Of a DNA stretch of 64,000 nt, positions 9,355 to 62,904 are shown piece after piece. Position 1 is the first letter of the stretch; each line of letters starts with the position of its first letter. The DNA is taken from positions 124,001 to 188,000 of IMG/VR virus record IMGVR_UViG_3300022200_000019; one strand, given 5' to 3'. The notes below the pieces were generated by a model. The model worked only from the letters and a program-made list of their open reading frames with translations. It did not search any database and was not told where the DNA came from. A program made the translations under genes and the position numbers.

Positions 9355-9391
9355 TTATTACTTAAATATAGTAAACAACGAGGTGACCAAA

Positions 9392-9496
9392 ATGAATATG
9401 GTTTGTGCTGTTTTGGACAGCGTAATTTTAGTACTTACTGTAATCACAATGTTTGCTGTTTTAAGAGGGTGGAAAAATGAAAAAGAAGCGCACTAA
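9392..9496 (+). CDS. 34-aa membrane peptide
   Basis: SD GAGGTG, TAAATA at 9363; MNMVCAVLDSVILVLTVITMFAVLRGW... Confidence 0.45.
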   Translation: MNMVCAVLDSVILVLTVITMFAVLRGWKNEKEAH

Positions 9497-9599
9497 AAAT
9501 CCAGTTGCTCGGTTTATGAATGATTTCAACAAGCCTGCAACACACCGAGACCGAACAAAATACTCGCGCAAAGCAAAACACACAAAACCTCTGTTGTAA
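9477..9599 (+). CDS. 40-aa basic protein, possibly ArfA-like
   Basis: MKKKRTKNPVARFMNDFNKPATHRDRTKYSRKAKHTKPLL; not in track. Confidence 0.55.
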   Translation: MKKKRTKNPVARFMNDFNKPATHRDRTKYSRKAKHTKPLL

Positions 9600-9619
9600 T
9601 ATTTTTATTTGTTTATATT

Positions 9620-15556: not shown

Positions 15557-15987
15557 CCATGCATCTTGTTAGAGGCATGACGACTACTCGTGTCGCCAAG
15601 AGTAAACGCAAAATTACTCGAGTCGACCACGAGCGGTATGTCGAATCTCATCGAGAATACAACAAGCGTTTAAAACAACAACACAGACACGCTGAACGTC
15701 TAACGCTTGACCAATACATCGATTACGTACACGGCAAAAGCCCTGTGCGTGCTAAACAGATAAGTAAACATTACACACACGCAGAATATCAACCTAAAGA
15801 AGAACGTTATCAGCGTTCTGTACCAAATATTCCAAGTGTAGATTTACGTGGAAATTTTGTTACTAAAACAGAGCCCATGAAATACACAGGAACATTAGTT
15901 AAAGGAATTGCAACGATGCATAAATCCAATGCTGTTCCGGTAATTGATGATCAGCATGCAAAAGATATTTCTAAGATGCGTAGATAA
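15553..15987 (+). CDS. Conserved T4-like-phage hypothetical protein
   Basis: C-terminal YTGTLVKGIATMHKSNAVPV...KDISKMRR. Confidence 0.75.
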   Translation: MTMHLVRGMTTTRVAKSKRKITRVDHERYVESHREYNKRLKQQHRHAERLTLDQYIDYVHGKSPVRAKQISKHYTHAEYQPKEERYQRSVPNIPSVDLRGNFVTKTEPMKYTGTLVKGIATMHKSNAVPVIDDQHAKDISKMRR

Positions 15988-15990
15988 TAT

Positions 15991-16209
15991 ATGGCAAAAG
16001 ACGATAACATTACATTAACAGGTACAGTAGTAGAAGTACTACCAGGCGCAACAGTTCGCGTTCGCTTACATGAAGCACAAAAAGAAATTATTGGTTATAT
16101 CAGCGGACGTATGCGCAAGAATAACATCAAAGTTTTAATGGGCGATGATGTAGAAATTGAAGTTAGCCCATACGATTTATCTAAAGGACGTATCACACGT
16201 CGTAAATAA
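15991..16209 (+). CDS. infA: Translation initiation factor IF-1
   Basis: MAKDDNITLTGTVVEVLPG...ISGRMRKNNIKVLMGDDVEIEVSPYDLSKGRITRR. Confidence 0.95.
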   Translation: MAKDDNITLTGTVVEVLPGATVRVRLHEAQKEIIGYISGRMRKNNIKVLMGDDVEIEVSPYDLSKGRITRRK

Positions 16210-16243
16210 ATACTTAACACTCTTTTGAAACGGAGGGTTAAGT

Positions 16244-16498
16244 ATGACATTAGACCAAACAGCAATGAAACAAATCGTGTCTGAGTGCAAAGCTCAGAAT
16301 AAAAAACCTTGCTTGCGTATAAAACTAAGCAACAATGTTGTAGAGTTCCACTACGACAGTTGTTCAGATATGCATTATGGTGGTTGCTTTGCTTACACAA
16401 CAAATGGTGTAACTGTAAGTGCTCCTGCTGATTGCGAACATTTAGTTACTGGTCGCACACTCTATTATAACACTGATCAAGGATTTCAATTGCTATAA
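16244..16498 (+). CDS. Possible degenerate HesB/IscA-like protein
   Basis: N-terminus resembles IscA (TLDQTAMKQI...CLRIKL); lacks C-terminal CGCG. Confidence 0.35.
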   Translation: MTLDQTAMKQIVSECKAQNKKPCLRIKLSNNVVEFHYDSCSDMHYGGCFAYTTNGVTVSAPADCEHLVTGRTLYYNTDQGFQLL

Positions 16499-16521
16499 TG
16501 CATAAATATGTGAAAACATAA

Positions 16522-16917
<396 letters not shown>

Positions 16918-16921
16918 ACAT

Positions 16922-46770: not shown

Positions 46771-48662
46771 TGAACCTTTACGATCTATTTGAAGCCTTAG
46801 TTGGTCATGACATGCCTCGCAGCAAGAAATATAGCAGCGATCAGTCTGACTTTGAAATACAGCCGCAACTAGGTGAATTAATAGATCGTATCGAAGCAGG
46901 CGAAATCAAACCTAAAATTGTAAAACTAAACCCACAGAAATTACAAGCAACGCAAGGATGGCTAGATACTCGCAATGGTGGCGGTGCGCCATTGCTAGAT
47001 CGCTATACAAAATTACCTGTTATTCTTAAAGATCAATCAGGATATCATATCTTAGACGGGCACCATAGAACATCCCACGCTCTTAGTAAAGGACAACAAT
47101 CGATTAAAGTTTATCTATTTCGCATGCCCGACGATTTAAGCGAAGCATCGTTTGCTGATTTAAAGAAACTGGTTCCTGTGTATAATGTTGATGAATGGTC
47201 ACAAGAATTAGGTATTCCACGTAAGGTAGCATACTTATACGGCGAACTTGGTTACTTACAACGCGGCAAACCAGAACAGATTATGGTTAAAGTTCAACAT
47301 TTTATGGGCGGTGGCGGAGTTGTTCCGTTTTGCTTAGAACACGTAGGTGACTTGTCAGATCGTATGACACCTAGACATCCATTACATTGGAGTTATGGTG
47401 CTGTAAAAGAAAAAGCAGAAAAAACATACAGATCGTTAACACACAGTTATGGATTTGAGCGCGAGTTCCAAGAGAACCTAGACGCTACAATCGAATATCA
47501 AAAGATTGAAAATCCAGATGAGTATCGTGAGCGTGTATATCGTGCTATGCAAATGTATGCCGATGCACATAAAGAATTGCTTCCATACTGCCACACAGAT
47601 ATTCACAAGAATGCTGTATATGCTGCTATCTCATTGGGTGAAAGAAAGTTTGATGATGCTGCTACCTTTGTAGGTGCAATCAAACGTCTTTGTGCTAGCG
47701 AAGAAAGTTATCACAATGCGCTAAGAGCATATGATAAAAAACTAGATGGCAAACTAGCAGGCGAAGAAGTACTAGACGAAGCGGGCGAATGGTGGAAAAC
47801 ATTTTCAGATGTAGTTTCTGGATCAAAAAAAGCATATGATACCGCAGTTATTGCTGGTCCCAAATGGCAAGCAGCAATTGATAGCAAAGATCCAGTTGTA
47901 ATTGATCAAGGTATTAAAGACTTAGCAAAAGACTTAGGTATGGATCCAAACGATCCAAAATACAAGCAATGGGCAGGCAGTATGCGTTACAAAGCATACA
48001 AAGCAGCGGATATTAAACACGATGTAACACGAGATGCTGAACGTAAAGCCTATGCTGCTGATCCACGACACTGGAAGGAACTTGAAATTCCCGGTTATGA
48101 TGAACCCTGGGTTACATTTAGTAAGCCATCCCCACGTGGTATTCCGCTTCGTGTAGGCGGTGACAAAGTAGATGAAGAGGCTCTTGACCGTTTTGAGATA
48201 GGCATGGGATTAGAGCAGATGCATAACAATGACATTGCTCTTGTTGGTGGCATGCGTTCAGGATCAAGCCCTGCTAACTTAACACGTTTAAAATATAGCA
48301 TTTATGATGTTCCTATGCTAAAACAACTAAAGCAAACAGGTGGCAATCAAAATGACGCACTCATGGGCCATGTTGAATTAATGGTAGAAGATGGCACAGG
48401 CGATCTTATTGGTTTAATTAACATCGAAATGAAGCGCGGCGGCAAACGCCAAGGTTACGGCTCACAAGTTGTGCGTTCTATTATTGATAGTCCGTTTGCT
48501 CGCAAGCCATTTAGAATCTACGATATACAAAAGAAAGCTGTGGGTTTTTGGAAGAAGATGGGTGTAGAGTTTACACACTCAGACTTTAAAACTCCTATTG
48601 CGCCGACTCAGCTGCCCAGGCTTGCATTGGGACCAGGGAATATATTTGGAATCATACGATGA
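46770..48662 (+). CDS. ParB/Srx-like + GNAT acetyltransferase modular protein with CTS-like leader
   Basis: MNLYDLFE; LQATQ...PVILK...ILDGHHR; KRQGYGSQVV...AVGFWKKMG. Confidence 0.75.
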   Translation: MNLYDLFEALVGHDMPRSKKYSSDQSDFEIQPQLGELIDRIEAGEIKPKIVKLNPQKLQATQGWLDTRNGGGAPLLDRYTKLPVILKDQSGYHILDGHHRTSHALSKGQQSIKVYLFRMPDDLSEASFADLKKLVPVYNVDEWSQELGIPRKVAYLYGELGYLQRGKPEQIMVKVQHFMGGGGVVPFCLEHVGDLSDRMTPRHPLHWSYGAVKEKAEKTYRSLTHSYGFEREFQENLDATIEYQKIENPDEYRERVYRAMQMYADAHKELLPYCHTDIHKNAVYAAISLGERKFDDAATFVGAIKRLCASEESYHNALRAYDKKLDGKLAGEEVLDEAGEWWKTFSDVVSGSKKAYDTAVIAGPKWQAAIDSKDPVVIDQGIKDLAKDLGMDPNDPKYKQWAGSMRYKAYKAADIKHDVTRDAERKAYAADPRHWKELEIPGYDEPWVTFSKPSPRGIPLRVGGDKVDEEALDRFEIGMGLEQMHNNDIALVGGMRSGSSPANLTRLKYSIYDVPMLKQLKQTGGNQNDALMGHVELMVEDGTGDLIGLINIEMKRGGKRQGYGSQVVRSIIDSPFARKPFRIYDIQKKAVGFWKKMGVEFTHSDFKTPIAPTQLPRLALGPGNIFGIIR

Positions 48663-49120
48663 GAGCAAACGAATTTATCAGCGAAATTAACCTAGATCCA
48701 CGCTCGTGGTTTGGTGCTGGACAAATGGGTGGCCGTGGAGGCAGTGGCTCTCAAGCAGTTGCTACTGGCGGACGCACAGCACCAGCAACCGCCAAACCAA
48801 ATCTAGGTAAATTTGAACGTACACCAGATGGAAAGATCATTGATCCACAAGGACAGGTAGTTAATCCACGCACAGGCGATCCGTATACAAAAGCAGACGT
48901 AACCAGAGACACTGGTAAGAGTCCAGAGTTTAAGAGTATATCTCCAGAGCGTTCACACTATGCTAGAACTACACAAGCAGACCGTGTTAGAGACGAACGT
49001 GCTGCACGCAACATGGAACGTTATGCCGATGAATACCAAGCAGCAAAAACTAGATGGCAAGAAAAAGGTGATGCTGCTTCATTTGGCGATATGATAAAGA
49101 TTCTAAACAGAGTAGATTAA
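48659..49120 (+). CDS. CTS-leader hypothetical protein
   Basis: MRANEFISE; Gly-rich. Confidence 0.75.
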   Translation: MRANEFISEINLDPRSWFGAGQMGGRGGSGSQAVATGGRTAPATAKPNLGKFERTPDGKIIDPQGQVVNPRTGDPYTKADVTRDTGKSPEFKSISPERSHYARTTQADRVRDERAARNMERYADEYQAAKTRWQEKGDAASFGDMIKILNRVD

Positions 49121-49353
49121 TGCGTGAATTGAGATATAACACGGAAACATTAGGTTTTTCGTCACCAGACGATAGTTGTTATCTAGATCCCAGCGATCCT
49201 ATACACGAATTTCGTCGCACAGGCAATGCTGCTGCATTAAATCAACCACGACGTATTCCAGTTGCACAACAGTTTGCAGAACATGAACGTAAAATGGAAT
49301 TAGCAAAAGCACAGGGTATTCGTCCTGGTTCCCCAGCATGGTATATGTTATGA
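49120..49353 (+). CDS. Hypothetical protein
   Basis: DDSCYLDPSDPIHE...GIRPGSPAW. Confidence 0.7.
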   Translation: MRELRYNTETLGFSSPDDSCYLDPSDPIHEFRRTGNAAALNQPRRIPVAQQFAEHERKMELAKAQGIRPGSPAWYML

Positions 49354-50174
49354 AAGTATCAGAAATTATTTGCGAAGGCACTGGTATCGACCAGCACATC
49401 GCGCCGGAATTATTGCAACAACAAGTAAATCAAATCATTGATGCTATTAAAGCAGGCGGTTATTTGTTAACGGATGCTGATAAAGCCTTGCTCGATTATG
49501 CACGTAAACAAAAAATCTATCATCCAGATGAAATTGCGAATAACAAATTCCATAAATCAATAATCGCATCTGTTAAGCCGTTGCTAAAAAAAATAGAACA
49601 GCTATGGTCTGAACCACGCGATATAACCAGTGATGTTGAAGCAATTATTGGTGAGCCTATTCTTACCCTTCATCAAAAAATAAAACCATTGCTTGCAAAT
49701 CCTAATAGACAACCAATGGATTATGTTGTGCGAGCAAACTTAACACAATTATTAATTGCTGCTGCATGCCCAAAAAACAATGGCACTTGGGATACCAGCA
49801 CAGCCAAATGCTATTCAAACAATTATCCTTGGATATTAGATCAGGTGAAGGAAAAGTATCGTGCTAAAGACAGAAAACGCCGTGCCAACATGACTCCAGA
49901 TGAAAGAGAAGAGGTTCAGGCTAAAGACAGAGAATATCAGCAACAAAGACGGGATACCATGACTCCAGCTGAAAGAGAAGAGTATTTGGCTTACGACAGA
50001 GAACGGAAACGTAACCGTCTTGCCAACATGTCTCCAGCTGAAAGAGAAGAGTATCGGGCTAAACATAGAGAATATTACCAACAGTGGACGGCTAACATGT
50101 CTCCAGCTAAAAGAGAAGAGTATTTGGCTAAAAAAAGAGAACGGCAACAACGGCGGAAGGCCAAGAAAAAATGA
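49350..50174 (+). CDS. CTS-leader protein with 23-aa charged repeats
   Basis: MKVSEIICE; ATG 49350. Confidence 0.75.
   Translation: MKVSEIICEGTGIDQHIAPELLQQQVNQIIDAIKAGGYLLTDADKALLDYARKQKIYHPDEIANNKFHKSIIASVKPLLKKIEQLWSEPRDITSDVEAIIGEPILTLHQKIKPLLANPNRQPMDYVVRANLTQLLIAAACPKNNGTWDTSTAKCYSNNYPWILDQVKEKYRAKDRKRRANMTPDEREEVQAKDREYQQQRRDTMTPAEREEYLAYDRERKRNRLANMSPAEREEYRAKHREYYQQWTANMSPAKREEYLAKKRERQQRRKAKKK
49890..50165 (+). repeat. 4 x 69-bp coding tandem repeat
   Basis: ATG(A/T)CTCCAG(A/C)T(G/A)AAAGAGAAGAG... = M(T/S)P(A/D)(E/K)REE...RE. Confidence 0.9.
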
Positions 50175-50374
50175 AAGTATCAGAAATCATCAACGAAGGT
50201 GTAGGACGTATTACGCCGCAAAACCAAACACAGGATGTCGGTCCTGATCAAGTTTCTATTGAAGCAAAGAAATTAGGTTTTAAAGTAGATCGGGATGGTC
50301 GCCCACCACTTTTAAGTTCAAACGCAAAGAAAAACACAAATCCTAACACACTATTCAATCTTGGCATAAATTAA
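50171..50374 (+). CDS. Small CTS-leader protein
   Basis: MKVSEIINE-GVGRIT... Confidence 0.75.
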   Translation: MKVSEIINEGVGRITPQNQTQDVGPDQVSIEAKKLGFKVDRDGRPPLLSSNAKKNTNPNTLFNLGIN

Positions 50375-52862: not shown

Positions 52863-55091
52863 ATGAACTTAAATGACATCCTCAACGAAAAAATTAAGAA
52901 AGTACATGGTAAGTGGGCCCTGGTAAGCAAAAGCGATCCGGATAAAGTCTTACAATATTATCATGGCAAAGACCATCCTAGCAAAGAATGGGAAAAGAAA
53001 GTTGAGCGTCGTGTTCATGCATTCTCAGAAGCAGAAAGTTTAGACAAAACCATTGATAGAATGCGTAACTTAGATATCGATGATATCGAACACCTGAAGC
53101 GTTATTCAAACCCACAATTAAAAGATTGGTTAAAACGCTTAACAGCAGCAAATAAAAACAATATTGGTTCAGCACTTAATACATTAGACACTATGGGTCC
53201 TATTGCTAAACCATTTGCTAAGTCATTTGTACAAAAGCAATTTCCAGGCATCGACGATACAGAGTTTGACCAAGCCTGGAAGTTCTGGCAAGAAACTGAT
53301 CCAGCAACTCGTTCAGCAGTTACTAAAGGTGACTTGACTACGCTTGATCCAAGAGACGAACATGGCTTTGTTAAAGAAGCCAATAATGACATAGTAGCGA
53401 ACAGTATCAATGAATACAATACCGACGGCATTGATCCAGGAAACGATGAACTATTTGTGCCTATGGGTCTGCTCAACCGTTTTGAAGATAATGGGTGGTA
53501 TGCATTTGACGGCGGTCGAGATCAAGCGGTGTTAGCCAAACGCAACATACCTTATGTGCTGAAAATTGTAGGTCAAGGATCGCACAACAGAATTGACGCA
53601 GTTCGCCAGTATGTTGATTTCTTTCGTCGCAATCAACATAATCCACATTTTCCCAAAGTGGGTAGTGATAAAACACTAACCTGGGAAGGCAAAAAATACT
53701 ATGCTTACGCTCAAGAAAAACTTATAGATTTACCGGGTGATGCGGTGATGGATTATCTCGAAGATACTATGCAATCATTTGGTCACAGCGGAAAACAGCC
53801 TAACTTTGACAAAATACCCCAGGGGCTGTCAGCAAAGCAAGTTAAAGGTTTAATGAATGCTATTAGTGAGTTGCTTGCATCGGGCATAGGCAATAATCGT
53901 GCGTTTGATTTGGGTAATGTCCTGAATATTATGAAACGAAAAAATGGACAGCTAGTGATTGTTGATCCATTTAGTTCTCACGATCGTTTAGATCCTAGCG
54001 AAGAATACGTGAGCGAAACAGATGATTATGATGCTTGGTTAGAAAAAGCCAAAAAACGTGCAGAAAAGCAAGCAGCAAAAAAACGTGCTGAATTACAGCA
54101 AGTAATGAAGGGCATCGAAACCGATCCAGAAAAACTAGCATTACAAGGTACAATTCAAGCGGCACGCGGTGAGCTTAGTAAGCGTAAGCGTGAAGCATTG
54201 GCTAAGATGGAGCAAATGAAACAAATTTACTCTGAGTTTTCTGATGAAGAATTAGATAAAATTATCGGGCGTTATTCAAAAGGTCCAGGTGCTGGTTCAG
54301 ATTTTGTGGAATGGTTAAAGTCCATTAAACAAGAACGCGAAGACGAGCGGTCTGGTGTTCAACAACGACAGGATGTATTTAGAAGCGTGGCAGGACCCAT
54401 GCAAGGCAAACAAAGCCAAAAGGCTGCACCTGCACAAGGTAAACCATGGACACAGTTAGGTATGACTCGTGATGAATTTAGAAAAATTCTAAACAACCCA
54501 CAACATCCTCGTCATAGAGAAATTAAACAATTACACGATCAGTATAAACAAGTCGACGAAGATTTAACTCGCAGAGATTTCTTAAAAGGTGTCGCAGGCG
54601 GGGCAATGGCGCTAGGGGCTATGAAAGCTGCTAAAGCATTAGGATTAAAAGATCCTACCAGATCCACAGACACTGATGATCAGTACCAGAGATTCACAGG
54701 CGCAAAACCTGCACCATTGTATGCTAAACCAGACCTGGATCCAGAACGTAAATGGAACCGTGTGGGTGTCAATCAACCAGGCGGTCAGTTCAGCATTGTG
54801 CTACACAAAGACTTTGATTTATATTTGTATTTTGTAACACGTGATTTTTCCACATCGCCCTATGCCTACATAGAATTACAGGATGGTGAAAAATATAAAT
54901 TCCGCATTCGTACTCTGAAAAACGATACATTTACCATCGAAGATCCCAGAATGGCAGCAACACTATTGAATTATCAAGGTAAATTCAATCTGTATGTTGG
55001 CGATGACGTGTACACATTTAACATCATGCCCAGTCAGGAATCCAAAGTATTATATCGCTGGTGGAAAGAAGGCACACATCAGGGATTGTGA
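52863..55091 (+). CDS. CTS-leader modular protein: kinase-like domain + internal Tat-signal module
   Basis: MNLNDILNE; GGRDQAV...VLK...FDLGNVLNIM...IVDP; VDE-DL-TRRDFLK. Confidence 0.75.
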   Translation: MNLNDILNEKIKKVHGKWALVSKSDPDKVLQYYHGKDHPSKEWEKKVERRVHAFSEAESLDKTIDRMRNLDIDDIEHLKRYSNPQLKDWLKRLTAANKNNIGSALNTLDTMGPIAKPFAKSFVQKQFPGIDDTEFDQAWKFWQETDPATRSAVTKGDLTTLDPRDEHGFVKEANNDIVANSINEYNTDGIDPGNDELFVPMGLLNRFEDNGWYAFDGGRDQAVLAKRNIPYVLKIVGQGSHNRIDAVRQYVDFFRRNQHNPHFPKVGSDKTLTWEGKKYYAYAQEKLIDLPGDAVMDYLEDTMQSFGHSGKQPNFDKIPQGLSAKQVKGLMNAISELLASGIGNNRAFDLGNVLNIMKRKNGQLVIVDPFSSHDRLDPSEEYVSETDDYDAWLEKAKKRAEKQAAKKRAELQQVMKGIETDPEKLALQGTIQAARGELSKRKREALAKMEQMKQIYSEFSDEELDKIIGRYSKGPGAGSDFVEWLKSIKQEREDERSGVQQRQDVFRSVAGPMQGKQSQKAAPAQGKPWTQLGMTRDEFRKILNNPQHPRHREIKQLHDQYKQVDEDLTRRDFLKGVAGGAMALGAMKAAKALGLKDPTRSTDTDDQYQRFTGAKPAPLYAKPDLDPERKWNRVGVNQPGGQFSIVLHKDFDLYLYFVTRDFSTSPYAYIELQDGEKYKFRIRTLKNDTFTIEDPRMAATLLNYQGKFNLYVGDDVYTFNIMPSQESKVLYRWWKEGTHQGL

Positions 55092-55411
55092 CCGTATAGG
55101 TCTTGTGTGGACAACATCTCCCATTTGTCCCATTCAGGACGCCAGTGATATTTGTATTCTCTGACTTTGCGAACCACCGTGGTAGACACATAATCACGGC
55201 AACCGCCAAACGGATCGCAATGTCTGGCTGATTTATCCTCTATGTGATATTGTTCCACAGGAGATTCATAATCTTTGGCACGATACTGATCCTGGCTGGT
55301 CGCCCATTCCCAGATTGCAGTGCTTGCCAGACTGATGCCCAGCGAATCCAGAAATGCTGGAGCCGCTGGACTATACAGACTAATTGTGGCGATCAGAATC
55401 AGCTGGCGCAT
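55079..55411 (-). CDS. Secreted hypothetical protein
   Basis: Signal-peptide-like N-terminus. Confidence 0.65.
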   Translation of the reverse strand: MRQLILIATISLYSPAAPAFLDSLGISLASTAIWEWATSQDQYRAKDYESPVEQYHIEDKSARHCDPFGGCRDYVSTTVVRKVREYKYHWRPEWDKWEMLSTQDLYGHNP

Positions 55412-55980
55412 TAACGACGTTCTAGATCTTCAAATGCACGTGCAGCCGCAGATTCATCTGTGACTGTGATGGATTCAGCCACAGCAACTTTTTCGGAAAT
55501 GCCAAGAGACAGGTTAATGTATGCACGATACATGGTTCCTTCCTTGAACACAGCCTTGTTGACTACACGATAACCGTTCACAGGAACATCTTTAAATTCG
55601 CTGACAGACACAAACTCGTTGGTCTGTGTAGAGTCGCTGGTTACGCTCTTGCGATTATCTGCGGTATACTGCTTAAATTTACCTGAAGTAAGAGCAGATA
55701 CTTTGTCGCCCAGTTTGATCTTAGCACTATGCAATGCTTTCTCCATTGCAAATTCCATGTCATCTGCGAGACCAGTTGCAGCAGCATAGATAATGCTACC
55801 ATCTTCAACACCTGGATCCAGATACCATACAGGTACAATTTCCTTCTTTTCAAGTGGCACAACACCAACAACGTCAACACCGCCGACCTTGTCTTCTGCT
55901 TCCATTCGTGCTACACTGCTGTTAGACGCACAACCGCCCACAAAGGCAGCAGCCATAGCAATTACGATTACCTTTTTCAT
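55411..55980 (-). CDS. Lipoprotein (LPP20-like)
   Basis: MKKVIVIAMAAAFVGG-C lipobox; PVWY...IYAAATG...A..KAL..AK..L. Confidence 0.75.
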   Translation of the reverse strand: MKKVIVIAMAAAFVGGCASNSSVARMEAEDKVGGVDVVGVVPLEKKEIVPVWYLDPGVEDGSIIYAAATGLADDMEFAMEKALHSAKIKLGDKVSALTSGKFKQYTADNRKSVTSDSTQTNEFVSVSEFKDVPVNGYRVVNKAVFKEGTMYRAYINLSLGISEKVAVAESITVTDESAAARAFEDLERR

Positions 55981-56129
55981 TTCTTTGTAACTCCAGTAGA
56001 GTCAATAATTTGAGACTTAACAGAATTATAATCTGCTTCGAGTCCCGCCATTGTGCCCTTGAATGGGTTAATACCTGTAGCACAAACAGCAAGAGCAACG
56101 GCAAGTACTACAATAATCAAAGTTTTCAT
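55977..56129 (-). CDS. 50-aa exported peptide
   Basis: MKTLIIVVLAVALAVCATGINPFKG...; SD AGGA; ATGA overlap with lipoprotein gene; not in track. Confidence 0.6.
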   Translation of the reverse strand: MKTLIIVVLAVALAVCATGINPFKGTMAGLEADYNSVKSQIIDSTGVTKK

Positions 56130-56166
56130 AATTAAAATTCATTCCTATATTGCGAAATGTATCTAT

Positions 56167-56194
56167 ATTATACACAATGCTAATCTAATGTCAA
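56167..56194 (-). promoter_or_regulatory. Sigma70-type promoter of the reverse operon
   Basis: TTGACA-16 bp-(TG)TATAAT on the - strand. Confidence 0.75.
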
Positions 56195-56221
56195 CCATTA
56201 ATTTTGTTGCATAAATACAAC

Positions 56222-56491
56222 ATGCGTGCCACAGAATTTTTAACAGAATCTTATCCAACAGTAACAATGAATTACCAGCAGTTTCTCGTTGAAGAACCTG
56301 TAAAAAGTTCATGGATTGAAGATTTATCTTATGTTGAATTCAAAGACGGATCTGGTGGTGTAAACATGACCACAAAGGGTGGCCGCACTTATTTTATCGA
56401 AGACGTACCATACGAAGTCTACGAACGCTGGTTAAAAGCTCTTAGCAAAGGCAAATTCTGGTGGTCAGACATCAAATACTTCTATACTTAA
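56222..56491 (+). CDS. KTSC-domain protein with CTS-like leader
   Basis: MRATEFLTE; VKSSWIEDLSY...GRTY...VP..VY..W..A.SKGKF...IK..Y. Confidence 0.8.
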   Translation: MRATEFLTESYPTVTMNYQQFLVEEPVKSSWIEDLSYVEFKDGSGGVNMTTKGGRTYFIEDVPYEVYERWLKALSKGKFWWSDIKYFYT

Positions 56492-56509
56492 TACCCGCAT
56501 AAATAGTAG

Positions 56510-57835
56510 ATGCGAGCAAGAGATTTCATTCTACTAGAATACAAGCACGACGTTACGATGAGAAACTATGGTGAAAAGTTTCGCGATCGCATGCTTGGCG
56601 ATATGACCATTACTGCTAGTACTCAGAGTAAACTAGAAGATGCTAAAGCTAAAGGCATAGGTCCGTCCAGTGATACGTTCACTCCAGGCTATCTAAGAAG
56701 AATCGAACAATCAGATCCAACTCCAAATCGAGAATACACACAGTGGATGGTGCGTAGTTATATTAACCGTGTTGTTAATTATTACGAAGACGTATTATCT
56801 ACACTTGCGGGCTTTGCTGGTATGTTTAACGAGCTTAAAATACATCGTCGTTTACCAGAAAAATATCGCGACATTAATCAAATCAAAACTCGAGAAATCT
56901 TTCGTGATGCTTATCGAGCAGTTGCTGATCGATATGAAGAATTCCGCGACGAACAGCAAGAACAGAAACCACTAAGCAAAGGCCACGCACAAGAAGTCTA
57001 CAACGGACCAGAAGTGAGAATCATCCATCCTGTAGACCAAGCGGCTGCTTGTTACTATGGGCAAGGTACACAGTGGTGTACTGCTAGTACACGCAGCCAA
57101 AATTACTTTAATGATTACAACAACGAAGGTCCGTTATTAATACTAATTCCCAAGAAGCCAGCGCATGAAGGCGAGAAATATCAATTACATGCTGCTAGCG
57201 AACAAGTTATGGACGAGCATGACAGTTCTGTTCCAATGGGTCACGTAGTAAGTAGATTCCCCAATACCAATCTTGGAGAGATTCTAATTAAATTTGATCC
57301 TGAATGGAAAGACTTTGCAGAACTAATGCATCCAGATGATCTTAAACGAATTGTTCGTTTGTATAACCAAAGACTTGTAAACTTTAACAAATGGATCTTG
57401 GATCAATACACCCAAAACAGCTCAATGTCAAAACAGCAACAACAAGAACTAAAAGCTGCTGCGGAACGTGCTGGTTGGCCAAACGCTGGTACATTCACAT
57501 ACGATCAGTTTGCTGAATATCTACGTACTGGATCTATCCATTCTAAGGAACGTTTTATAAGAACACTAGTTGATCTATCTTATGATTTATTAATCCCGCA
57601 TTTAAGAAGCAATGACGCTCTTGAGCAGTTTGACAAGACTCCTAGAGATGTTTTAAATACTCAAGGAATGGTAGGATTAAGCAAAAGAAACTTTGTTCAA
57701 ACATGGACAGTATTATTAAATGACTGGAGAATTCGGTTTAGTGATGAAGATCCAGATTGGGCAACATATGTTGGGCCTACTAACAACAGCATGTATAATA
57801 ACGCAGTAGGGTATACCGATTGGAGTAGCCGATGA
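56510..57835 (+). CDS. CTS-leader paralogue 1 (DPTPN / YYGxGTxWCTA family)
   Basis: MRARDFILLE; shared core with three downstream genes. Confidence 0.85.
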   Translation: MRARDFILLEYKHDVTMRNYGEKFRDRMLGDMTITASTQSKLEDAKAKGIGPSSDTFTPGYLRRIEQSDPTPNREYTQWMVRSYINRVVNYYEDVLSTLAGFAGMFNELKIHRRLPEKYRDINQIKTREIFRDAYRAVADRYEEFRDEQQEQKPLSKGHAQEVYNGPEVRIIHPVDQAAACYYGQGTQWCTASTRSQNYFNDYNNEGPLLILIPKKPAHEGEKYQLHAASEQVMDEHDSSVPMGHVVSRFPNTNLGEILIKFDPEWKDFAELMHPDDLKRIVRLYNQRLVNFNKWILDQYTQNSSMSKQQQQELKAAAERAGWPNAGTFTYDQFAEYLRTGSIHSKERFIRTLVDLSYDLLIPHLRSNDALEQFDKTPRDVLNTQGMVGLSKRNFVQTWTVLLNDWRIRFSDEDPDWATYVGPTNNSMYNNAVGYTDWSSR

Positions 57836-59166
57836 GAGCTCGTGAATTTATCGTAGAATATAAACGCGACATTACCATGAAAAACTGGTACGACAAGATC
57901 TTACGGCAACAAATGGTCGATAAAACCTACACCACACACGCTCAAAATGAAATCAGAGATTGGCTGGAAAAACGTGCTCGAGGAGAACTAACTCAACTTG
58001 AACAAGAGTTGTTAGATCAATCAGTCGAAATGATAGTAAGACAATTTGAATCTGCAGATCCAAGTCCAAACAAACAGTATGTACAATGGATGTTGCGTAT
58101 TTGGACCAATCCAAATGGTGTTGGCAGAATCGAAGATGTTACGTCCACAACAGCAGAAATGCTACACAAGTACCACGAACTAAAACAACGCAATCGTTTG
58201 CCTATTGACATTCGCGACATTAACCAGGTTAAGGATATGCGAACACTGGAAAAGTTGCACGATGATGTGGATCGTTTATATGCATTACTAGATAAAGATA
58301 AAATAGCAGCAATGCCAAAAGGCTCTGCTCGTGAAGTATATAACGGACCAGATTTTAGACTTATCGTTCCAGAAGATGAAGCAGCCGCTTGTTATTATGG
58401 CCAAGGAACACGCTGGTGTACGGCAGCAACCAAGGGTCATAATATGTTTGATCACTATAGTAAGGCTGGCCCTATCTACATTCTCATTCCTAAAAAGCCA
58501 GAGTATGAAGGTGAAAAATATCAATTACACGGCGCATCACGCCAATCAATGGATGAACGAGATCAGCCATACTATATTGGTAATTTACTTGGCAGATTCC
58601 CTGAGCTAAAAGAAATATTATTTTCTACTGATGATTTTTATAGTTGGGTTGAGATAATGCCGGATGCTTTTGTTGAGGATGGCGTTGCTACCTGGAATGC
58701 GTATGCTGCGAAACATTTTAAAGAATGGGGTCTAACACAAGTATTGACTGGTTGGACGCGAACTGCTAAGAATCGCGGCGAGATTGTGGATGTACAAAAA
58801 ACCTGGGAAAAGGTTAGAAAAGTATTGCTTGACTTGCTAGCAAATAGCGAAGTTTCAGTAGCAGACTTTTATGATGCTGCTACACAGACGCACATCAAAG
58901 GCGATACTGGTGCTACAGATGCTGAAAATGAGTTTGCTCGAATACTTTCATATGCGTGGAAGTATAACCTGATAGAAGCGTTAAAAGCCGGTTATCTGGG
59001 TGTGAATGCTAAGGTTAGTTTAGAACATCCTGAATGGGATATTACAGTTCGTGTAATAGATTCTGAAGCGAACGCCTGGAAAGATTCCACTGCCGAGTGG
59101 AGCAATGACGAGGGCTGGGAATTCTCCATTAATGATCCCGAAGATACTCGCTACAATGAGGACTAA
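57832..59166 (+). CDS. CTS-leader paralogue 2
   Basis: MRAREFIVE; DPSPNKQYVQW, ACYYGQGTRWCTA. Confidence 0.85.
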   Translation: MRAREFIVEYKRDITMKNWYDKILRQQMVDKTYTTHAQNEIRDWLEKRARGELTQLEQELLDQSVEMIVRQFESADPSPNKQYVQWMLRIWTNPNGVGRIEDVTSTTAEMLHKYHELKQRNRLPIDIRDINQVKDMRTLEKLHDDVDRLYALLDKDKIAAMPKGSAREVYNGPDFRLIVPEDEAAACYYGQGTRWCTAATKGHNMFDHYSKAGPIYILIPKKPEYEGEKYQLHGASRQSMDERDQPYYIGNLLGRFPELKEILFSTDDFYSWVEIMPDAFVEDGVATWNAYAAKHFKEWGLTQVLTGWTRTAKNRGEIVDVQKTWEKVRKVLLDLLANSEVSVADFYDAATQTHIKGDTGATDAENEFARILSYAWKYNLIEALKAGYLGVNAKVSLEHPEWDITVRVIDSEANAWKDSTAEWSNDEGWEFSINDPEDTRYNED

Positions 59167-59168
59167 AT

Positions 59169-60485
59169 GTGAGAGCCAAAGAGTTTTTATTAGAATATAA
59201 CAGAGACATCACCAAAAAGAACTATGGTGACAAGATTGTTCTGCGCTGGGGCGTGGGAGCTGTTAGCAGTGGATTAAGCATTCGCCGTGTACACGACAAG
59301 ATTCTTGCTGGCGAACCATTGGATGCCAACGAACAAAATGTTTATGATGAAGCAGTTGCTAACATTATTAACAAAGCAGAAATTGCTGACCCAACTCCAA
59401 ACAAACAATATGTACAGTGGCTTGTTCGTGCGTGGATCAATAAACTGCTAAGACTTGCTGAAGATATTCTTTCATCAGGCAGTGAGTTTGTTAAAATGTG
59501 GCACGAGTTAAAAACTCACCGTATGCTACCGCCAAATTACACAGACATTAACAGAATTAAAACACCGAGCGATTGGAATCAGGCCTGGGTGGATATTCGA
59601 GCAGCATACGAAAACTTCAAACCCAAGAAGCCAATGCCCAAAGGCAAGGCACGTGAACTGTTAAACAATGCGGAAGTAAGAATCGTTCGCCCAGAAAATG
59701 AAGCAGCGGCTTGCTATTACGGACAAGGCACACAGTGGTGTACGGCTGCTACAGAAACACGCAACTTGTTTGATCATTATCACAAAGATGGCGATCTAAG
59801 TATCTTTATTCCTAAGAATCCACGGTACGAAGGTGAAAAATATCAACTGTGGGTCAATAACGACACTGGTGGATATCAGTTAATGAACGAACAAGACGAT
59901 CCACTTGAATACGGCCTAGAAGAACTAACAGACAGATTTAATACATTAACTTATGAGATTTTAGAAAAACTACATCCAGCACTAATGAAACATCCTGAAT
60001 TTAACACTGAAGAATTTGAGTCAGTTAAACGGCAAATTGCTGTTAACCTATTCAAAAATGGATACTTCAAATTAGCATATAGCGATCTAATTAATATGCT
60101 TGATGATTCATTTGACGAATACGACAAAGATTCCATTAATTATATGAAAGAAATGTTTATGGAAATGGAAGCTGAAGTGTTGCGAGCTATTAACAATGTT
60201 GGATACGATGAACTCGCATTTAATGATCCTGGTGTAACATTCCCTGAGTTACCCAATGCTGTATTTAGATGGCTTGAATACATGACTGATGACACCAACA
60301 TGTGGGGCGATTGGGCTGACGACGAATATATGGTAGGCTTTATCAGCAACATTGAAGCCTGGTTTAACAGACAAACAAATTGGGACAAGCGTAATCAGAA
60401 TCAAACTCTGATACCGTACTACAGCATCAAACAAGACGAAAAAACTGGAAAGTGGGAAGTAGAGTACGAAGGCCCGTGGACATGA
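59169..60485 (+). CDS. CTS-leader paralogue 3
   Basis: (GTG)RAKEFLLE; DPTPNKQYVQW, ACYYGQGTQWCTA. Confidence 0.85.
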   Translation: MRAKEFLLEYNRDITKKNYGDKIVLRWGVGAVSSGLSIRRVHDKILAGEPLDANEQNVYDEAVANIINKAEIADPTPNKQYVQWLVRAWINKLLRLAEDILSSGSEFVKMWHELKTHRMLPPNYTDINRIKTPSDWNQAWVDIRAAYENFKPKKPMPKGKARELLNNAEVRIVRPENEAAACYYGQGTQWCTAATETRNLFDHYHKDGDLSIFIPKNPRYEGEKYQLWVNNDTGGYQLMNEQDDPLEYGLEELTDRFNTLTYEILEKLHPALMKHPEFNTEEFESVKRQIAVNLFKNGYFKLAYSDLINMLDDSFDEYDKDSINYMKEMFMEMEAEVLRAINNVGYDELAFNDPGVTFPELPNAVFRWLEYMTDDTNMWGDWADDEYMVGFISNIEAWFNRQTNWDKRNQNQTLIPYYSIKQDEKTGKWEVEYEGPWT

Positions 60486-61885
60486 GAGCAAACGATTTAA
60501 TTTTTGAATACAAGCGTGACGTAACCGTAAAGAATTATACTGACAGACTGATTGATCGTATGATCAGCGATGGCAGTGTCGAACGTATGACGTTTGGCGG
60601 CAATGGATGGGGTTACACCACAGATGATATGTTTGATATGGTTCGCGGCATTCAGTGGCAGAATCAACCGCCGTTGACTCCAGAAAAAGTAGAAGCAGCC
60701 AAGGAAATATTTGCGAGAGGTGCTATTACACAAATTGAGCAAGCAGATCCTACCAGTAAAAAAGCCTACACAGAATGGTTGGTAATGGCATATATCAACA
60801 GTATATTTGTGCGTTGGGAAGACATATTCTCAACTGGAACTGATTTCTTAGCAATGTATAACGACCTAAAGCAACGCAACTTATTTAATAAAGTCGATAC
60901 TCTTAAAGCAGTATCAAACATTAAACAAATCAACAATCGCGAAAGATTTAGATGGGCATATACTACAATTTCAAACGCACACGATTTTTATCTCGGTCAA
61001 ACCACAGACATTGATCGCGGCGATGCTGAAGAAATCCACAACGGACCAGAAGTTCGTGTACTAAAAGTAAACGATCAAAAAGCAGCGTGTTATTATGGAC
61101 GCGGCACAGAATGGTGTACAGCAGCAACACGTTCTCGCAATATGTTTGATCACTATAACCGTACTGGAAACATATACATATTCATTCCTAAAAAGCCACA
61201 GCACGACGGTGAAAAATATCAGTTCTGGGCAGGCGACGATGGGCGCAACGTTGATATTCAACTAATGGACGAACACGACGAGCCAGTAGATTTTGAAACC
61301 TGGGACAATCGTTTTCCAGGATTGGGCATCAAATACTTGTATGATCTTGAACCTAAGGTATTGAGTCAGTTTGTTATGTTTAACCGAAAGCGATTTGATT
61401 ATATCATAGCCGAAGTTGTTGAACTTTTACAAAACAACTGGAAATGGGATGTCGTTGCTGACTGGGAGCATGACGATGATTATTATTGGCAATGGTTGCG
61501 TGACGAAGGTTACATAGATGACGAAGGCGACTTTGATGATGATAAAATGGAAAAAGACGGCATAAACTATCTAGAGTTTAACGACGATTTGCGCCGAGGA
61601 CTAAACGACGTGTTTGACGCTTTTGAAGAACTTACACCGTCAGAACTCAATAATTTTTATAGTGATGACAATGGTGGACCATTGGACTTCTACCGTATGA
61701 TTGATACCTTAGGTGACTGGATAGAAGATCAAGCCGGCAGTCACTATGAAAGTTTATTCAAAGATGCCGGTAATTTCATTGCCAATAATATTGGCAGTTA
61801 CTCAGATAAGGAAGGTAACTTTAAGGTAGATCATGTTGCTAATATTCGCGGTACACCTTATCTAGCGCATCCAGCTAGACGATAA
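60482..61885 (+). CDS. CTS-leader paralogue 4
   Basis: ATG 60482, MRANDLIFE; DPTSKKAYTEW, ACYYGRGTEWCTA; acidic C-terminus. Confidence 0.85.
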   Translation: MRANDLIFEYKRDVTVKNYTDRLIDRMISDGSVERMTFGGNGWGYTTDDMFDMVRGIQWQNQPPLTPEKVEAAKEIFARGAITQIEQADPTSKKAYTEWLVMAYINSIFVRWEDIFSTGTDFLAMYNDLKQRNLFNKVDTLKAVSNIKQINNRERFRWAYTTISNAHDFYLGQTTDIDRGDAEEIHNGPEVRVLKVNDQKAACYYGRGTEWCTAATRSRNMFDHYNRTGNIYIFIPKKPQHDGEKYQFWAGDDGRNVDIQLMDEHDEPVDFETWDNRFPGLGIKYLYDLEPKVLSQFVMFNRKRFDYIIAEVVELLQNNWKWDVVADWEHDDDYYWQWLRDEGYIDDEGDFDDDKMEKDGINYLEFNDDLRRGLNDVFDAFEELTPSELNNFYSDDNGGPLDFYRMIDTLGDWIEDQAGSHYESLFKDAGNFIANNIGSYSDKEGNFKVDHVANIRGTPYLAHPARR

Positions 61886-61915: not shown

Positions 61916-62494
61916 ATGAACTTATCCGAAGAACTCAGAAAATATGCCAATATCTTAAATGAAGAACGCACAGACGAATACTTTGATTATGGCGACGATG
62001 CCGATACCAGCAATGAACCAGCAGGTATGCCGTTTTATAAACTGCCTGCAAAAAGTTCAGCAGTAAAAATCACAAATAAAGCGCACCAAGCCGGACTAAA
62101 CACAGTTGAGTTTCAAGGACAATATCTGAGTGTTTCGCCTAACCAAGCCGATCGGCTGGAAGAACTAATGCGTGCCATGCGCATGCAGTTTACGCCGGTA
62201 ACGGGTGTTCCTGATTGGGGTGCAGATGATTCACATCTAAGTCGCAAAGAACGTGCTCGTGGCATGCCATATAAATTTAGCGAAAACAAATCGGTAATTC
62301 GTAAAAGATTTCCCAAATTAGAAAAAGCAATTATTCAAGATCAAGATCCAGAGTTGGCATCTCTGTATGCCATAAAGGTAATCGGAGGCAGATGGCCCGA
62401 AGCAGAACCAGTGATTGCCAAAGATTCAGAGTCGGCATCTCTGTATGCCCGATATATACTCAAAGGTCCTTGGCCCGAAGCAGGGATCAAATGA
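61916..62494 (+). CDS. Candidate head protein with 26-aa C-terminal repeat
   Basis: MNLSEELRKYANILNE; ASLYA..(V/I)..G(R/P)WPEA x2. Confidence 0.75.
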   Translation: MNLSEELRKYANILNEERTDEYFDYGDDADTSNEPAGMPFYKLPAKSSAVKITNKAHQAGLNTVEFQGQYLSVSPNQADRLEELMRAMRMQFTPVTGVPDWGADDSHLSRKERARGMPYKFSENKSVIRKRFPKLEKAIIQDQDPELASLYAIKVIGGRWPEAEPVIAKDSESASLYARYILKGPWPEAGIK

Positions 62495-62904
62495 GAGCAA
62501 GAGAATTCACATCTGAAGCAGATATGACACGTAGAGATTTTCTCAAACGTGCAGCAGCAACACTGGCAGCACCAGCAGTAGCAAAGGCTGGTCCTCCGGT
62601 TAGTGACGAAACTACCCAAGCAGTTGATCTAGCACAAGATCCAAACTGGATGCCACTATACAAAGACGGCGAACCAGTTACTGCTCCTCCATATGCTCAA
62701 GAGTTATATGGCAAGGGTTATCCAAAAGATACAGATTATCGTCCCGTTGATCCAATTGATTCGTTTGAAAAAGACCCAGACGTTCAGAGATTCTATGATC
62801 TCAAAGCAAAACGTTGTTTGGCAAACCGTGGCACACCAGTAAAGGATGCGCAAGGTAACATAGATTGTACGCAAGTACGTGGTAAAGCATCGCAAACATG
62901 GTAG
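62491..62904 (+). CDS. CTS-leader protein with Tat signal
   Basis: ATG 62491; MRAREFTSE-ADM-TRRDFLK-RAAATLAAPAVAKA. Confidence 0.8.
   Translation: MRAREFTSEADMTRRDFLKRAAATLAAPAVAKAGPPVSDETTQAVDLAQDPNWMPLYKDGEPVTAPPYAQELYGKGYPKDTDYRPVDPIDSFEKDPDVQRFYDLKAKRCLANRGTPVKDAQGNIDCTQVRGKASQTW

What the first reader, a model, noticed from the sequence alone, without database searches (positions are those of the whole stretch)
56510..61885. Four tandem paralogues: conserved core, unrelated C-termini (polymorphic effector array)
Seen: four 438-467 aa genes share the order CTS leader, Y(K/N)(R/H)D(I/V)TxxN, a variable helical part, DP(T/S)xNKxYxxW, (D/N)IxxIK, (K/R)GxAxExxNxxxxRxxxxxxxxAACYYGxGTxWCTA, NxFxxY...G...IxIPKxPxxxGEKYQ(L/F), (M/L)M(D/N)ExD. 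The last roughly 150-200 aa look unrelated between copies. DNA has diverged too far for a recent duplication. Inference: a conserved core (enzyme or delivery module with an invariant Trp-Cys) is joined to variable specificity domains, like a diversified anti-defence or host-range array. The WCT core may relate to PcfJ-like domains (from memory, unverified).
Basis: partly seen in the sequence, partly recalled or inferred. Interest (0 to 1): 0.75.

Follow-up and report, generated by a model that had tools for sequence, protein, structure and literature searches.

The report
Tandem capsid-tagged phage effector paralogues
A large T4-like phage carries four diverged copies of a gene from a very large, unnamed phage protein family; each copy has a T4-style "pack me into the capsid" tag, a conserved core with an invariant cysteine and its own acidic tail, so the proteins are probably injected with the DNA, but this has not been tested.

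Summary
The four genes are real: W1 56510-57835, W2 57832-59166, W3 59169-60485 and W4 60482-61885. They are paralogues, with BLAST E-values of 1e-50 to 1e-68. Cores are 38-46% identical. Tails are not alignable by BLAST or hhalign.

The window lies in a 213-kb, roughly 61%-complete viral record with a T4-type major capsid protein.

Each protein starts with M-R-A-x-E/D-F/L-I/L-x-E. This closely resembles the T4 IpII/IpIII capsid-targeting sequence and ends in an I/L-x-E prohead-protease motif. About 13 genes in the record carry this tag, and 10 of them lie within 14 kb.

A T4-like late-promoter motif (CATAAATA) sits 4 nt before W1. The Pseudomonas phage PA5oct homologue is annotated as a virion protein found by mass spectrometry.

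The core family is very large: 10,950 clusters at 50% identity. It has no Pfam, NCBIfam or PADLOC match and no solved-fold match. A link to PcfJ is only weakly suggested.

The tails are not truly unrelated. All four are about 170 aa and end in the same hairpin motif. W2-W4 are acidic. The W2 and W4 models are helical and superpose on the same third-party structures. Tails and cores are both under purifying selection.

Close relatives carry 1, 3 or at least 6 copies.

My best reading is a family of packaged, injected effectors. The mechanism is inferred, not shown.

The parts
56210..56217 (+). CATAAATA late-promoter-like motif, 4 nt upstream of the KTSC-like gene
   Evidence: All 16 copies in the 213-kb record are on the + strand, 4-108 nt upstream of a + strand gene. 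Genes behind other copies include tail tube, tail fibre/spike and virion structural proteins.
56222..56491 (+). 89-aa gene with leader MRATEFLTE and a weak KTSC domain. It sits directly upstream of the family gene in relatives too.
   Evidence: Synteny is kept in L027, L038 and L039.
56498..56505 (+). CATAAATA late-promoter-like motif, 4 nt upstream of the W1 ATG, with no Shine-Dalgarno sequence between them
56510..57835 (+). W1, 441 aa. Leader aa 1-10 (nt 56510-56539), core to aa ~265 (nt 57304), W-C-T at nt 57074-57082, near-neutral tail nt 57305-57832.
   Evidence: Tail orthologues are P0007-P0009. W1 is absent from the close relative L039.
57832..59166 (+). W2, 444 aa. Leader aa 1-9 (nt 57832-57858), core to aa ~269, W-C-T at nt 58414-58422, acidic helical tail plus terminal hairpin.
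   Evidence: AF2 model with pLDDT 88. Tail orthologues are P0001-P0006. Mosaic identity: core 100% / tail 82% against P0001, and core 76% / tail 87% against P0003.
59169..60485 (+). W3, 438 aa, with a GTG start that is conserved in orthologues. Leader aa 1-9, W-C-T at nt 59736-59744, acidic tail.
   Evidence: The orthologue P0032 is 96-98% identical.
60482..61885 (+). W4, 467 aa. Leader aa 1-9, core to aa ~292, W-C-T at nt 61112-61120. The very acidic tail is of the commonest type in the family.
   Evidence: AF2 model with pLDDT 89.6. Its tail cluster holds 130 of 236 tails.
48659..50374 (+). Three further leader-bearing genes: 48659-49120 MRANEFISE, 49350-50174 MKVSEIICE and 50171-50374 MKVSEIINE
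52863..55091 (+). 742-aa gene with leader-like MNLNDILNE and CATAAATA 7 nt upstream
62491..62904 (+). 137-aa gene with leader MRAREFTSE followed by a Tat-type signal

Best explanation
W1-W4 are a late-transcribed, tightly packed operon of anciently diverged paralogues of a very large, uncharacterised protein family that searches found almost only in viruses. Each protein has three parts. First comes a 9-10-residue N-terminal tag, M-R-A-x-(E/D)-(F/L)-(I/L)-x-E. Second comes a ~255-aa conserved core: a helical lobe plus an alpha/beta lobe carrying an invariant W-C-T loop. Third comes a ~170-aa helical tail ending in a beta-hairpin; its sequence is specific to each paralogue. Most likely the tag works like the T4 capsid-targeting sequence. 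It would load the proteins into the prohead core, and a T4-type (S77) prohead protease would clip it after the I/L-x-E. The mature proteins would then travel in the head and be ejected with the DNA, acting in the first minutes of infection. The core would supply a common activity or docking function, possibly with the invariant Cys as catalytic or ligand residue. The tail would decide which host partner, plausibly a defence protein, each paralogue engages. This would parallel T4 Ip1, Ip2 and Ip3, each of which blocks a different GmrSD subtype. Shown here: paralogy, domain layout, the shared tag, the late-promoter-like motif, family size, copy-number variation, purifying selection, and the virion annotation of one homologue. 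Inferred: packaging, cleavage, ejection and any anti-defence role.
For: Phage type: the record encodes a T4 Gp23-type capsid protein (E 7e-99). Its N-terminal region holds H-L-T-E, matching T4 gp23's own F-L-T-E region; that T4 gp23 is cleaved there is from my own knowledge, not from a tool. Tag: T4 IpII/IpIII start MKTYQEFIAE and IpI starts MKTFKEFTS. In T4, residues 4 and 7 of the tag target and residues 8 and 10 direct cleavage (PMC9026906). The window's tag, M-R-A-x-E-F-I/L-x-E, has the same E-F-I-x-E pattern and heads W1-W4 and at least five unrelated genes. It is enriched at N-termini: 10-13 cases against a mean of about 2.4 at internal offsets. It is encoded with synonymous variation (AGA/CGA/CGT and GCA/GCC/GCT), so selection acts on the peptide. 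Its residues are low-confidence in both models. Protease motif at unit boundaries: multi-core polyproteins keep [IL]-x-E-[AS] before every unit, and proteins with N-terminal extensions keep I/L-x-E-Y directly before the core. Late expression: CATAAATA is strand-specific (16 on +, 0 on -), precedes tail and virion genes, and precedes W1, the KTSC gene and the 742-aa gene. Virion link: PA5oct EST35_0205 is annotated 'structural protein, ESI-MS/MS' and starts MKLFEVFTLYE; PA5oct and the record holding L012 both encode an S77 protease; the tagged gene at G000:39331 matches a 'virion structural protein' PHROG. Accessory, modular behaviour: copy number is 1 in L025 and L027, 3 in L039, at least 3 in L038, 4 here, and 6 genes with 7 cores in L008; C-terminal modules are swapped for repeat domains in relatives; core and tail identities are mosaic between relatives. 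Precedent: T4 Ip1-3 are injected, tag-bearing, subtype-specific GmrSD inhibitors (PMC12373910).
Against: There is no proteomic or N-terminal data for this phage. The prohead protease gene was not found in the record; the contig starts at the capsid gene, so this is uninformative rather than negative. E9-Y10 is invariant and the I/L-x-E-Y motif persists inside longer proteins, so it could be a structural part of the core rather than a cleavage site. One tagged gene continues straight into a Tat export signal, which fits a cytoplasm-to-periplasm route at least as well as capsid packaging. The proteins are ~50 kDa and share a large core, unlike the small, mutually unrelated T4 Ips. 'Structural' in PA5oct does not say head interior or ejected. 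No defence-related or enzymatic domain was detected, and no solved fold matches the core. dN/dS shows no arms-race signal at this timescale.
Confidence: 0.55

Rival explanations
1. The proteins are non-ejected building or assembly components of the large head, such as prohead-core, scaffold-associated or inner-body-like proteins. The tag still targets them to the prohead, but their role is architectural rather than directed at the host.
For: The PA5oct homologue is annotated as a structural protein. The late-promoter-like motif and the tag fit equally well. Giant phages such as phiKZ and SPN3US have tandem paralogue families of processed head-internal proteins (PMC5694885 and PMC7411985, listed; the details are from my own knowledge). 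Acidic helical proteins could space DNA.
Against: Copy number varies from 1 to at least 6 between relatives, and W1 is present or absent among phages about 93% identical in DNA. In relatives the C-terminal module is replaced by LRR, ankyrin, DUF4116 or WG repeats, which are typical partner-binding modules. The gene sits near DNA polymerase, not in the head module.
Confidence: 0.15
2. The proteins are cytoplasmic enzymes or regulators that are not packaged. The shared N-terminal peptide would serve another purpose, such as translation of leaderless late mRNAs, regulated stability, or being the first structural element of the core.
For: W1 and the KTSC gene have the promoter-like motif only 4 nt before the ATG, with no Shine-Dalgarno sequence. 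One tagged gene carries a Tat signal right after the tag. E-Y at the tag/core junction is invariant even when internal. The locus lies among replication-type genes in relatives.
Against: W2-W4 have ordinary Shine-Dalgarno sequences yet keep the tag. The tag is shared by proteins with unrelated folds. Synonymous codon variation shows selection on the peptide. The close match to the T4 capsid-targeting sequence, the capsid protein's L-T-E and the virion annotation of the PA5oct homologue would all be coincidences.
Confidence: 0.15
3. This is a host-range array. The proteins are tail- or fibre-associated adaptors whose variable tails bind different cell-surface receptors.
For: There is a variable C-terminal module on a conserved N-terminal module. 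The PA5oct homologue is annotated as structural. Some relatives carry LRR or WG repeats.
Against: The tails are acidic helical bundles rather than beta-rich trimeric fibres. There is no similarity to tail or fibre families. An N-terminal tag like the T4 capsid-targeting sequence points to the head interior. The genes are not in the tail module found at G000 21-50 kb.
Confidence: 0.05

Closest known systems
T4 internal proteins IpI, IpII and IpIII, and other tag-bearing proteins of T-even phages
   Same: There is a short N-terminal tag with the same M-(K/R)-x-x-(x)-E-F-(I/L/T)-x-E pattern, ending in an I/L-x-E prohead-protease motif (PMC9026906). The phage has a T4-type capsid. There are several differently specialised tag-bearing genes per phage, in variable accessory loci. 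T4 Ip1-3 each inhibit one GmrSD subtype after injection (PMC12373910).
   Different: T4 Ips are 8-21 kDa and share only the tag. Here the proteins are ~50 kDa and share a 255-aa conserved core with an invariant Cys, and only the last ~170 aa differ. Packaging, cleavage and targets are untested here.
PcfJ domain proteins (Pfam PF14284) of conjugative plasmids and Firmicutes phages
   Same: Foldseek returns many PcfJ-annotated viral proteins over core residues ~66-267 (E 0.02-0.4, probability up to 0.97). 19 of 100 language-model neighbours are clusters in which some members carry PcfJ. hhalign's best alignment is colinear and puts W-C-T on the PcfJ H-C-V motif. Both families travel on DNA that enters new cells. 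In pCF10, PcfJ lies next to an AcrIIA9-family gene.
   Different: There is no significant sequence match: no PF14284 hit at E <= 10 and hhalign probability < 1%. PcfJ itself has no known function, so the link would not explain the mechanism.
Paralogue families of processed head-internal or ejection proteins in giant phages (phiKZ inner body, SPN3US ejection proteins) and the P1 Dar proteins
   Same: They are head-packaged accessory proteins, some in tandem paralogue sets, matured by the prohead protease and delivered with the DNA (PMC5694885, PMC7411985, PMC12810830).
   Different: No homology was detected. phiKZ-type proteases cut at a different motif (from my own knowledge). Those phages are not T4-like.
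Polymorphic toxin / effector arrays
   Same: A conserved N-terminal part is joined to a variable C-terminal part, in tandem copies.
   Different: There are no immunity genes between the copies, since the genes overlap or abut. No toxin domains are present. The tails are conserved orthologous types under purifying selection.

Membership tests
T4-type capsid-targeted internal proteins | N-terminal ~10-residue capsid-targeting sequence resembling MKTYQEFIAE | tested here: met
   The tags of W1-W4 and of neighbouring genes were compared with T4 ipI, ipII and ipIII translated from NC_000866.
T4-type capsid-targeted internal proteins | Prohead-protease motif (I/L-x-E) at the end of the tag, and actual cleavage there | tested here: inconclusive
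   The motif is present in all four proteins and before every unit of the polyproteins. Cleavage itself cannot be tested in silico.
T4-type capsid-targeted internal proteins | The phage encodes a gp21-type (Peptidase_S77) prohead protease | tested here: inconclusive
   It was not found in the record. The record is about 61% complete and begins at the capsid gene, and in T4 the protease gene lies just upstream of it. It is present in the family-bearing PA5oct and in the record holding L012.
T4-type capsid-targeted internal proteins | The protein is present inside the mature head and is ejected | not testable with these tools
   The only evidence is that the PA5oct homologue is annotated as a structural protein by ESI-MS/MS.
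T4-type capsid-targeted internal proteins | Expression at the time of head assembly (late promoter) | tested here: met
   CATAAATA sits 4 nt upstream of W1. The motif is strand-specific and associated with tail and virion genes. This is promoter-motif evidence only, not transcript data.
PcfJ (PF14284) | Match to the Pfam model above its gathering score | tested here: not met
   There was no hit at E <= 1 for the four proteins, none at E <= 10 in the whole record, and none among the families listed for 88 family members scanned at E <= 10.
PcfJ (PF14284) | Significant profile-profile or structural similarity to PcfJ domains | tested here: inconclusive
   hhalign gives E 0.64 and 0.14 with probability < 1%, but in a consistent register. 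Foldseek gives probability 0.5-0.97 with TM 0.16-0.25.
Polymorphic toxin/effector arrays | C-terminal toxin domains, each followed by a cognate immunity gene | tested here: not met
   No ORFs lie between the copies. No toxin or defence domains were found.

The most novel reading that the evidence does not exclude
The family (about 11,000 clusters at 50% identity, found almost only in viruses, with no solved fold) would be a general, previously unrecognised class of capsid-delivered effectors of T4-like and other large phages. A protease-released core with a catalytic or ligand Cys would be aimed at different host proteins by exchangeable C-terminal modules: acidic helical tails, LRR, ankyrin, DUF4116 or WG repeats. 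Phages would keep arrays of them, or polyproteins cut into units at I/L-x-E, as a pre-loaded counter-defence kit.
Probability: 0.3. Interest if true: 0.85.

Novelty: new variant of a known kind. Interest (0 to 1): 0.68.

Why it matters
Injected phage proteins act before any phage gene is expressed, so they are the first line against host immunity. Only a handful have known targets: T4 Ip1-3, the P1 Dar proteins and T4 Alt.

If this reading is right, one of the largest unannotated phage protein families is a modular set of such proteins. It would be recognisable from sequence by a short tag, and it would offer many natural core-plus-tail combinations to test against defence systems. The tag could also help predict which genes of uncultured T4-like phages encode head cargo.

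If the reading is wrong, the family is still a very abundant domain with no matching solved fold and an invariant Cys, and is worth a structure and an assay.

Tried and rejected
- Pfam, PHROGs, NCBIfam and PADLOC scans of the four proteins and their neighbours gave no informative family. Only PHROGs 28193 and 17056 matched, both of unknown function.
- A profile search against PDB sequences found nothing.
- blastn of the array against phage genomes gave no match.
- A tail-only homologue search for W3 found only the near-identical P0032, because of the word index.
- A scan of 185,579 species genomes with two core patterns found no relative.
- The PcfJ link was tested twice with hhalign, the second time with a broader 14-sequence PcfJ profile built from pCF10 and seven phages. 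Both results were non-significant.
- A literature search for 'PcfJ' mostly returned C. elegans plasmid names. The polyvalent-protein survey does not mention PcfJ or DUF4116.
- The PA5oct paper's supplementary proteomics tables are not held.
- A kinase-like look of the insert in the 742-aa gene got no Pfam support.
- Positive selection on the tails was rejected at whole-region level.
- A nucleotide-level explanation of the tag (recombination site or RNA element) was rejected because of synonymous variation.


Full report
**What is there.** ORF listing shows four abutting + strand genes: W1 56510-57835 (441 aa), W2 57832-59166 (444 aa), W3 59169-60485 (438 aa, GTG start) and W4 60482-61885 (467 aa from the ATG). 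W1/W2 and W3/W4 overlap by ATGA, and W2/W3 are 2 nt apart. W2-W4 have Shine-Dalgarno-like sequences. Alignment and BLASTP show clear paralogy over the first ~260-320 residues, at 34-44% identity and E 1e-50 to 5e-68. Beyond that there is no BLAST-alignable similarity. DNA similarity between copies is confined to ~200-bp patches at 70-75% identity.

**Genomic setting.** The window is bases 124001-188000 of a 212,917-bp IMG/VR viral record estimated to be 61% complete. The record starts with a T4 Gp23-type major capsid gene (E 7e-99). No S77 protease was found. In T4 that gene lies just upstream of the scaffold and capsid genes, which here would be beyond the contig end. Only these four copies exist in the record. 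The surrounding 20 kb is almost entirely unannotatable.

**The N-terminal tag.** All four proteins begin M-R-A-x-(E/D)-(F/L)-(I/L)-x(1-2)-E, followed by Y-(K/N)-(R/H)-D.
- The same tag heads unrelated genes: window 48659, 56222 (KTSC-like), 62491 (followed by a Tat signal), and G000 30415 and 207418. Looser versions occur at window 49350, 50171 and 52863, and at G000 39331.
- With crude gene calls, the loose motif occurs 10-13 times at N-termini, against a mean of about 2.4 at internal offsets. Ten of the tagged genes lie in window 48.6-62.9 kb.
- The tag's codons vary synonymously, so the peptide is what is conserved.
- T4 ipII and ipIII, translated from NC_000866, start MKTYQEFIAE. ipI starts MKTFKEFTS and gp24 starts MAKINELLRE.
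- The T4 tag is a 10-residue capsid-targeting sequence. Residues 4 and 7 direct targeting, and residues 8 and 10 direct cleavage by gp21 (PMC9026906).
- The capsid protein of this record has H-L-T-E in its N-terminal region, matching the F-L-T-E of T4 gp23. The alignment offsets the two sites by about 12 residues. That T4 gp23 is cut after this F-L-T-E, and that the site here is used, are respectively my own knowledge and an inference.
- In both AlphaFold models the tag is the low-confidence N-terminal stretch before the first long helix.

**The tag across the family.**
- Of 120 homologues, nearly all start M-R-(A/F/Y)-x-E-(F/L)-L-x-E-Y.
- More distant ~550-aa relatives start M-K-Y-I-I-(T/S)-E. 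The PA5oct homologue starts MKLFEVFTLYE.
- Proteins with 60-215-aa N-terminal extensions keep I/L-x-E-Y immediately before the core.
- Polyproteins with 2-5 cores keep [IL]-x-E-[AS] before each unit.
- This fits a retained protease site. It could equally mean the motif is part of the core.

**Late expression.**
- CATAAATA occurs 16 times on the + strand and never on the - strand, always 4-108 nt upstream of a + strand gene.
- Genes behind it, or behind TATAAATA, match tail tube, minor tail/fibre, tail spike and virion structural PHROGs. It is therefore very likely this phage's version of the T4 late promoter.
- Copies sit 4 nt before the KTSC gene, 4 nt before W1 and 7 nt before the 742-aa gene. 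The array is probably transcribed late from the W1 site.

**Virion link.**
- tblastn against phage genomes finds the core in Pseudomonas jumbo phage PA5oct and its relatives, in Caulobacter phage CcrBL9 and in Salicola phage SCTP-2.
- The PA5oct gene EST35_0205 is single-copy and annotated 'structural protein, ESI-MS/MS'.
- PA5oct and the record holding L012 both encode an S77 protease.
- The paper reports 93 virion-associated proteins (PMC7318152). Its supplementary tables are not held.

**Family size and architecture.**
- A core profile (A4) hits 10,950 representatives of 50%-identity clusters at E <= 1e-3, and 1,968 at E <= 1e-30.
- None of the hits listed with source names or Pfam domains carries a functional name or a Pfam domain. 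NCBIfam and PADLOC are also blank.
- Most members have the same layout: core at the N-terminus plus a ~170-aa tail.
- Foldseek and Atlas neighbours show the same core fused to DUF4116, LRR, LRV, ankyrin, FNIP or WG repeats, including in metagenomic giant-virus bins. A 717-aa DUF4116-like fusion and a two-core 763-aa protein sit in the L008 array.
- No relative was found in 185,579 species genomes with two strict core patterns.

**Structure.** The W2 model has pLDDT 88 and the W4 model has pLDDT 89.6. Both show four parts: the tag, a helical lobe, an alpha/beta lobe with the W-C-T loop as its least confident part, and then a long helix, further helices and a terminal beta-hairpin. Neither Foldseek nor VIA finds a solved fold for the core. 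Invariant positions in W2 numbering are E9, Y10, D76, D102, G190, W195, C196, T197, Y209, K229 and Q231. Each protein has only two Cys, both in the core motif.

**PcfJ.**
- PF14284 does not hit.
- I built a PcfJ profile from pCF10 PcfJ and its relatives. I then built a broader one with seven phage PcfJ domains.
- hhalign aligns the core colinearly with PcfJ, placing W-C-T on H-C-V. The statistics are not significant: E 0.64 and 0.14, probability < 1%.
- Thirteen of the top 50 BFVD hits and three of the top 30 AFDB-cluster hits are PcfJ-annotated. 19 of 100 language-model neighbours are PcfJ-containing clusters.
- I rate a remote relationship as plausible but unproven. PcfJ has no known function. 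In pCF10 it lies beside an AcrIIA9-family gene.

**Tails.**
- At sequence level the four tails belong to four different BLAST clusters of 47. W4's is the commonest type, with 130 of 236 tails. hhalign between tail profiles gives probability <= 2%.
- Each tail type has orthologues elsewhere at 44-98% identity.
- Against the close relatives L038 and L039, dN/dS is 0.05-0.28 in tails and 0.05-0.20 in cores. Only the W2 tail is relaxed relative to its own core.
- Tails are acidic across the family: 96% are net negative, with a median of -11 per 100 aa. W1's tail is near neutral.
- A terminal D/E-x-G-x-W/F-x-V hairpin motif recurs in W1-W4 and in several other clusters.
- The W2 and W4 models match the same two Atlas representatives almost end to end. 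They also match the same segments of the same PDB helical chains.
- So at least W2 and W4 probably share one scaffold that has diverged past sequence recognition. W1 and W3 were not modelled.

**Dynamics of the locus.**
- L039 is 93% identical in DNA over W2-W4. It has KTSC-W2-W3-W4, lacks W1, and lacks the minus-strand cassette.
- L038 has KTSC-W1-W2, an extra 105-aa gene, then W3. L027 and L025 have a single copy a few kb from DNA polymerase B. L008 has six genes with seven cores, interleaved with other tagged genes.
- W2 is 100% identical to P0001 in the core but 82% in the tail. Against P0003 it is 76% in the core and 87% in the tail, which indicates recombination near the core/tail junction.

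**Interpretation.** The combination points to tag-directed loading into the prohead, clipping by the prohead protease, and delivery with the DNA. The combination is: a T4-type capsid; a tag like the T4 capsid-targeting sequence ending in I/L-x-E and shared by unrelated neighbours; a late-promoter-like motif; the virion annotation of one homologue; S77 proteases in relatives; and accessory, modular behaviour. The precedent is T4 Ip1-3, which are injected and each block one GmrSD subtype (PMC12373910). What the conserved core does is unknown. An enzyme or adaptor using the invariant Cys is a guess. The acidic tails could be target-binding or DNA-mimicking modules. I put about 0.55 on the packaged-and-injected reading. 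The rivals are an architectural head component, unpackaged cytoplasmic proteins, and a host-range array.

Noticed in passing
G000-wide; in the window at 16501, 52848, 56210, 56498 and 63438: CATAAATA occurs 16 times on the + strand and 0 times on the - strand, always just upstream of a gene. It looks like a T4-type late promoter. Several copies sit only 4-7 nt before the ATG with no Shine-Dalgarno sequence, which suggests leaderless late mRNAs.
   Followed up: partly
window 55079-56194, minus strand: A perfect sigma-70 promoter (TTGACA-16-TATAAT) at 56194-56167 faces a small minus-strand cassette. The cassette includes a lipoprotein-like gene (55411-55980, signal peptide ending in Cys). The whole cassette is absent from the close relative L039, so it looks like an inserted early-expressed moron.
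   Followed up: partly
window 62491-62904 and 52863-55091: The 137-aa gene has the capsid-type tag immediately followed by a twin-arginine (Tat) signal. The 742-aa gene has a Tat-like motif internally, at aa 567-585. A tagged and possibly injected protein that is then exported by host Tat would be unusual.
   Followed up: no
window ~53381-54014, inside the gene at 52863-55091: An in-frame insertion of about 185-210 aa is absent from the 531- and 532-aa orthologues in L038 and L039. It is homologous (E 2e-7) to a stand-alone tagged gene in the L008 array (L008 13668-14339). Modules therefore move between tagged proteins.
   Followed up: partly
P0121, P0146, P0152, P0207, P0212 (metagenomic proteins): These are giant proteins of 814-1,844 aa with 2-5 copies of the core. 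In the four whose sequences I read (P0121, P0152, P0207, P0212), the cores alternate with WG-type repeats and each unit is preceded by [IL]-x-E-[AS]. They may be polyproteins cut by a prohead protease.
   Followed up: partly
L008 2550-17251: The related 239-kb viral contig has an array of six family genes (seven cores). They are interleaved with other tagged genes, including a weak GNAT-like one (3322-4041) and a DUF4116-like fusion (7845-9998).
   Followed up: partly
L038 10170-10487: A 105-aa gene of unknown function is inserted between W2 and W3 in a close relative. It is absent from the window.
   Followed up: no
window 61916-62494: The 192-aa gene after W4 ends in two copies of a ...LYA..(I/V)..G.WPEAE... 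repeat. No family match was found for it.
   Followed up: no
window 9281-9354: A tRNA-Trp (CCA) gene is the only tRNA in the window.
   Followed up: no
L024 (pCF10) 15874-17984: In pCF10 the gene that gave PcfJ its name directly abuts an AcrIIA9-family gene and lies near a DpnD/PcfM gene. This is an anti-defence-like neighbourhood.
   Followed up: no
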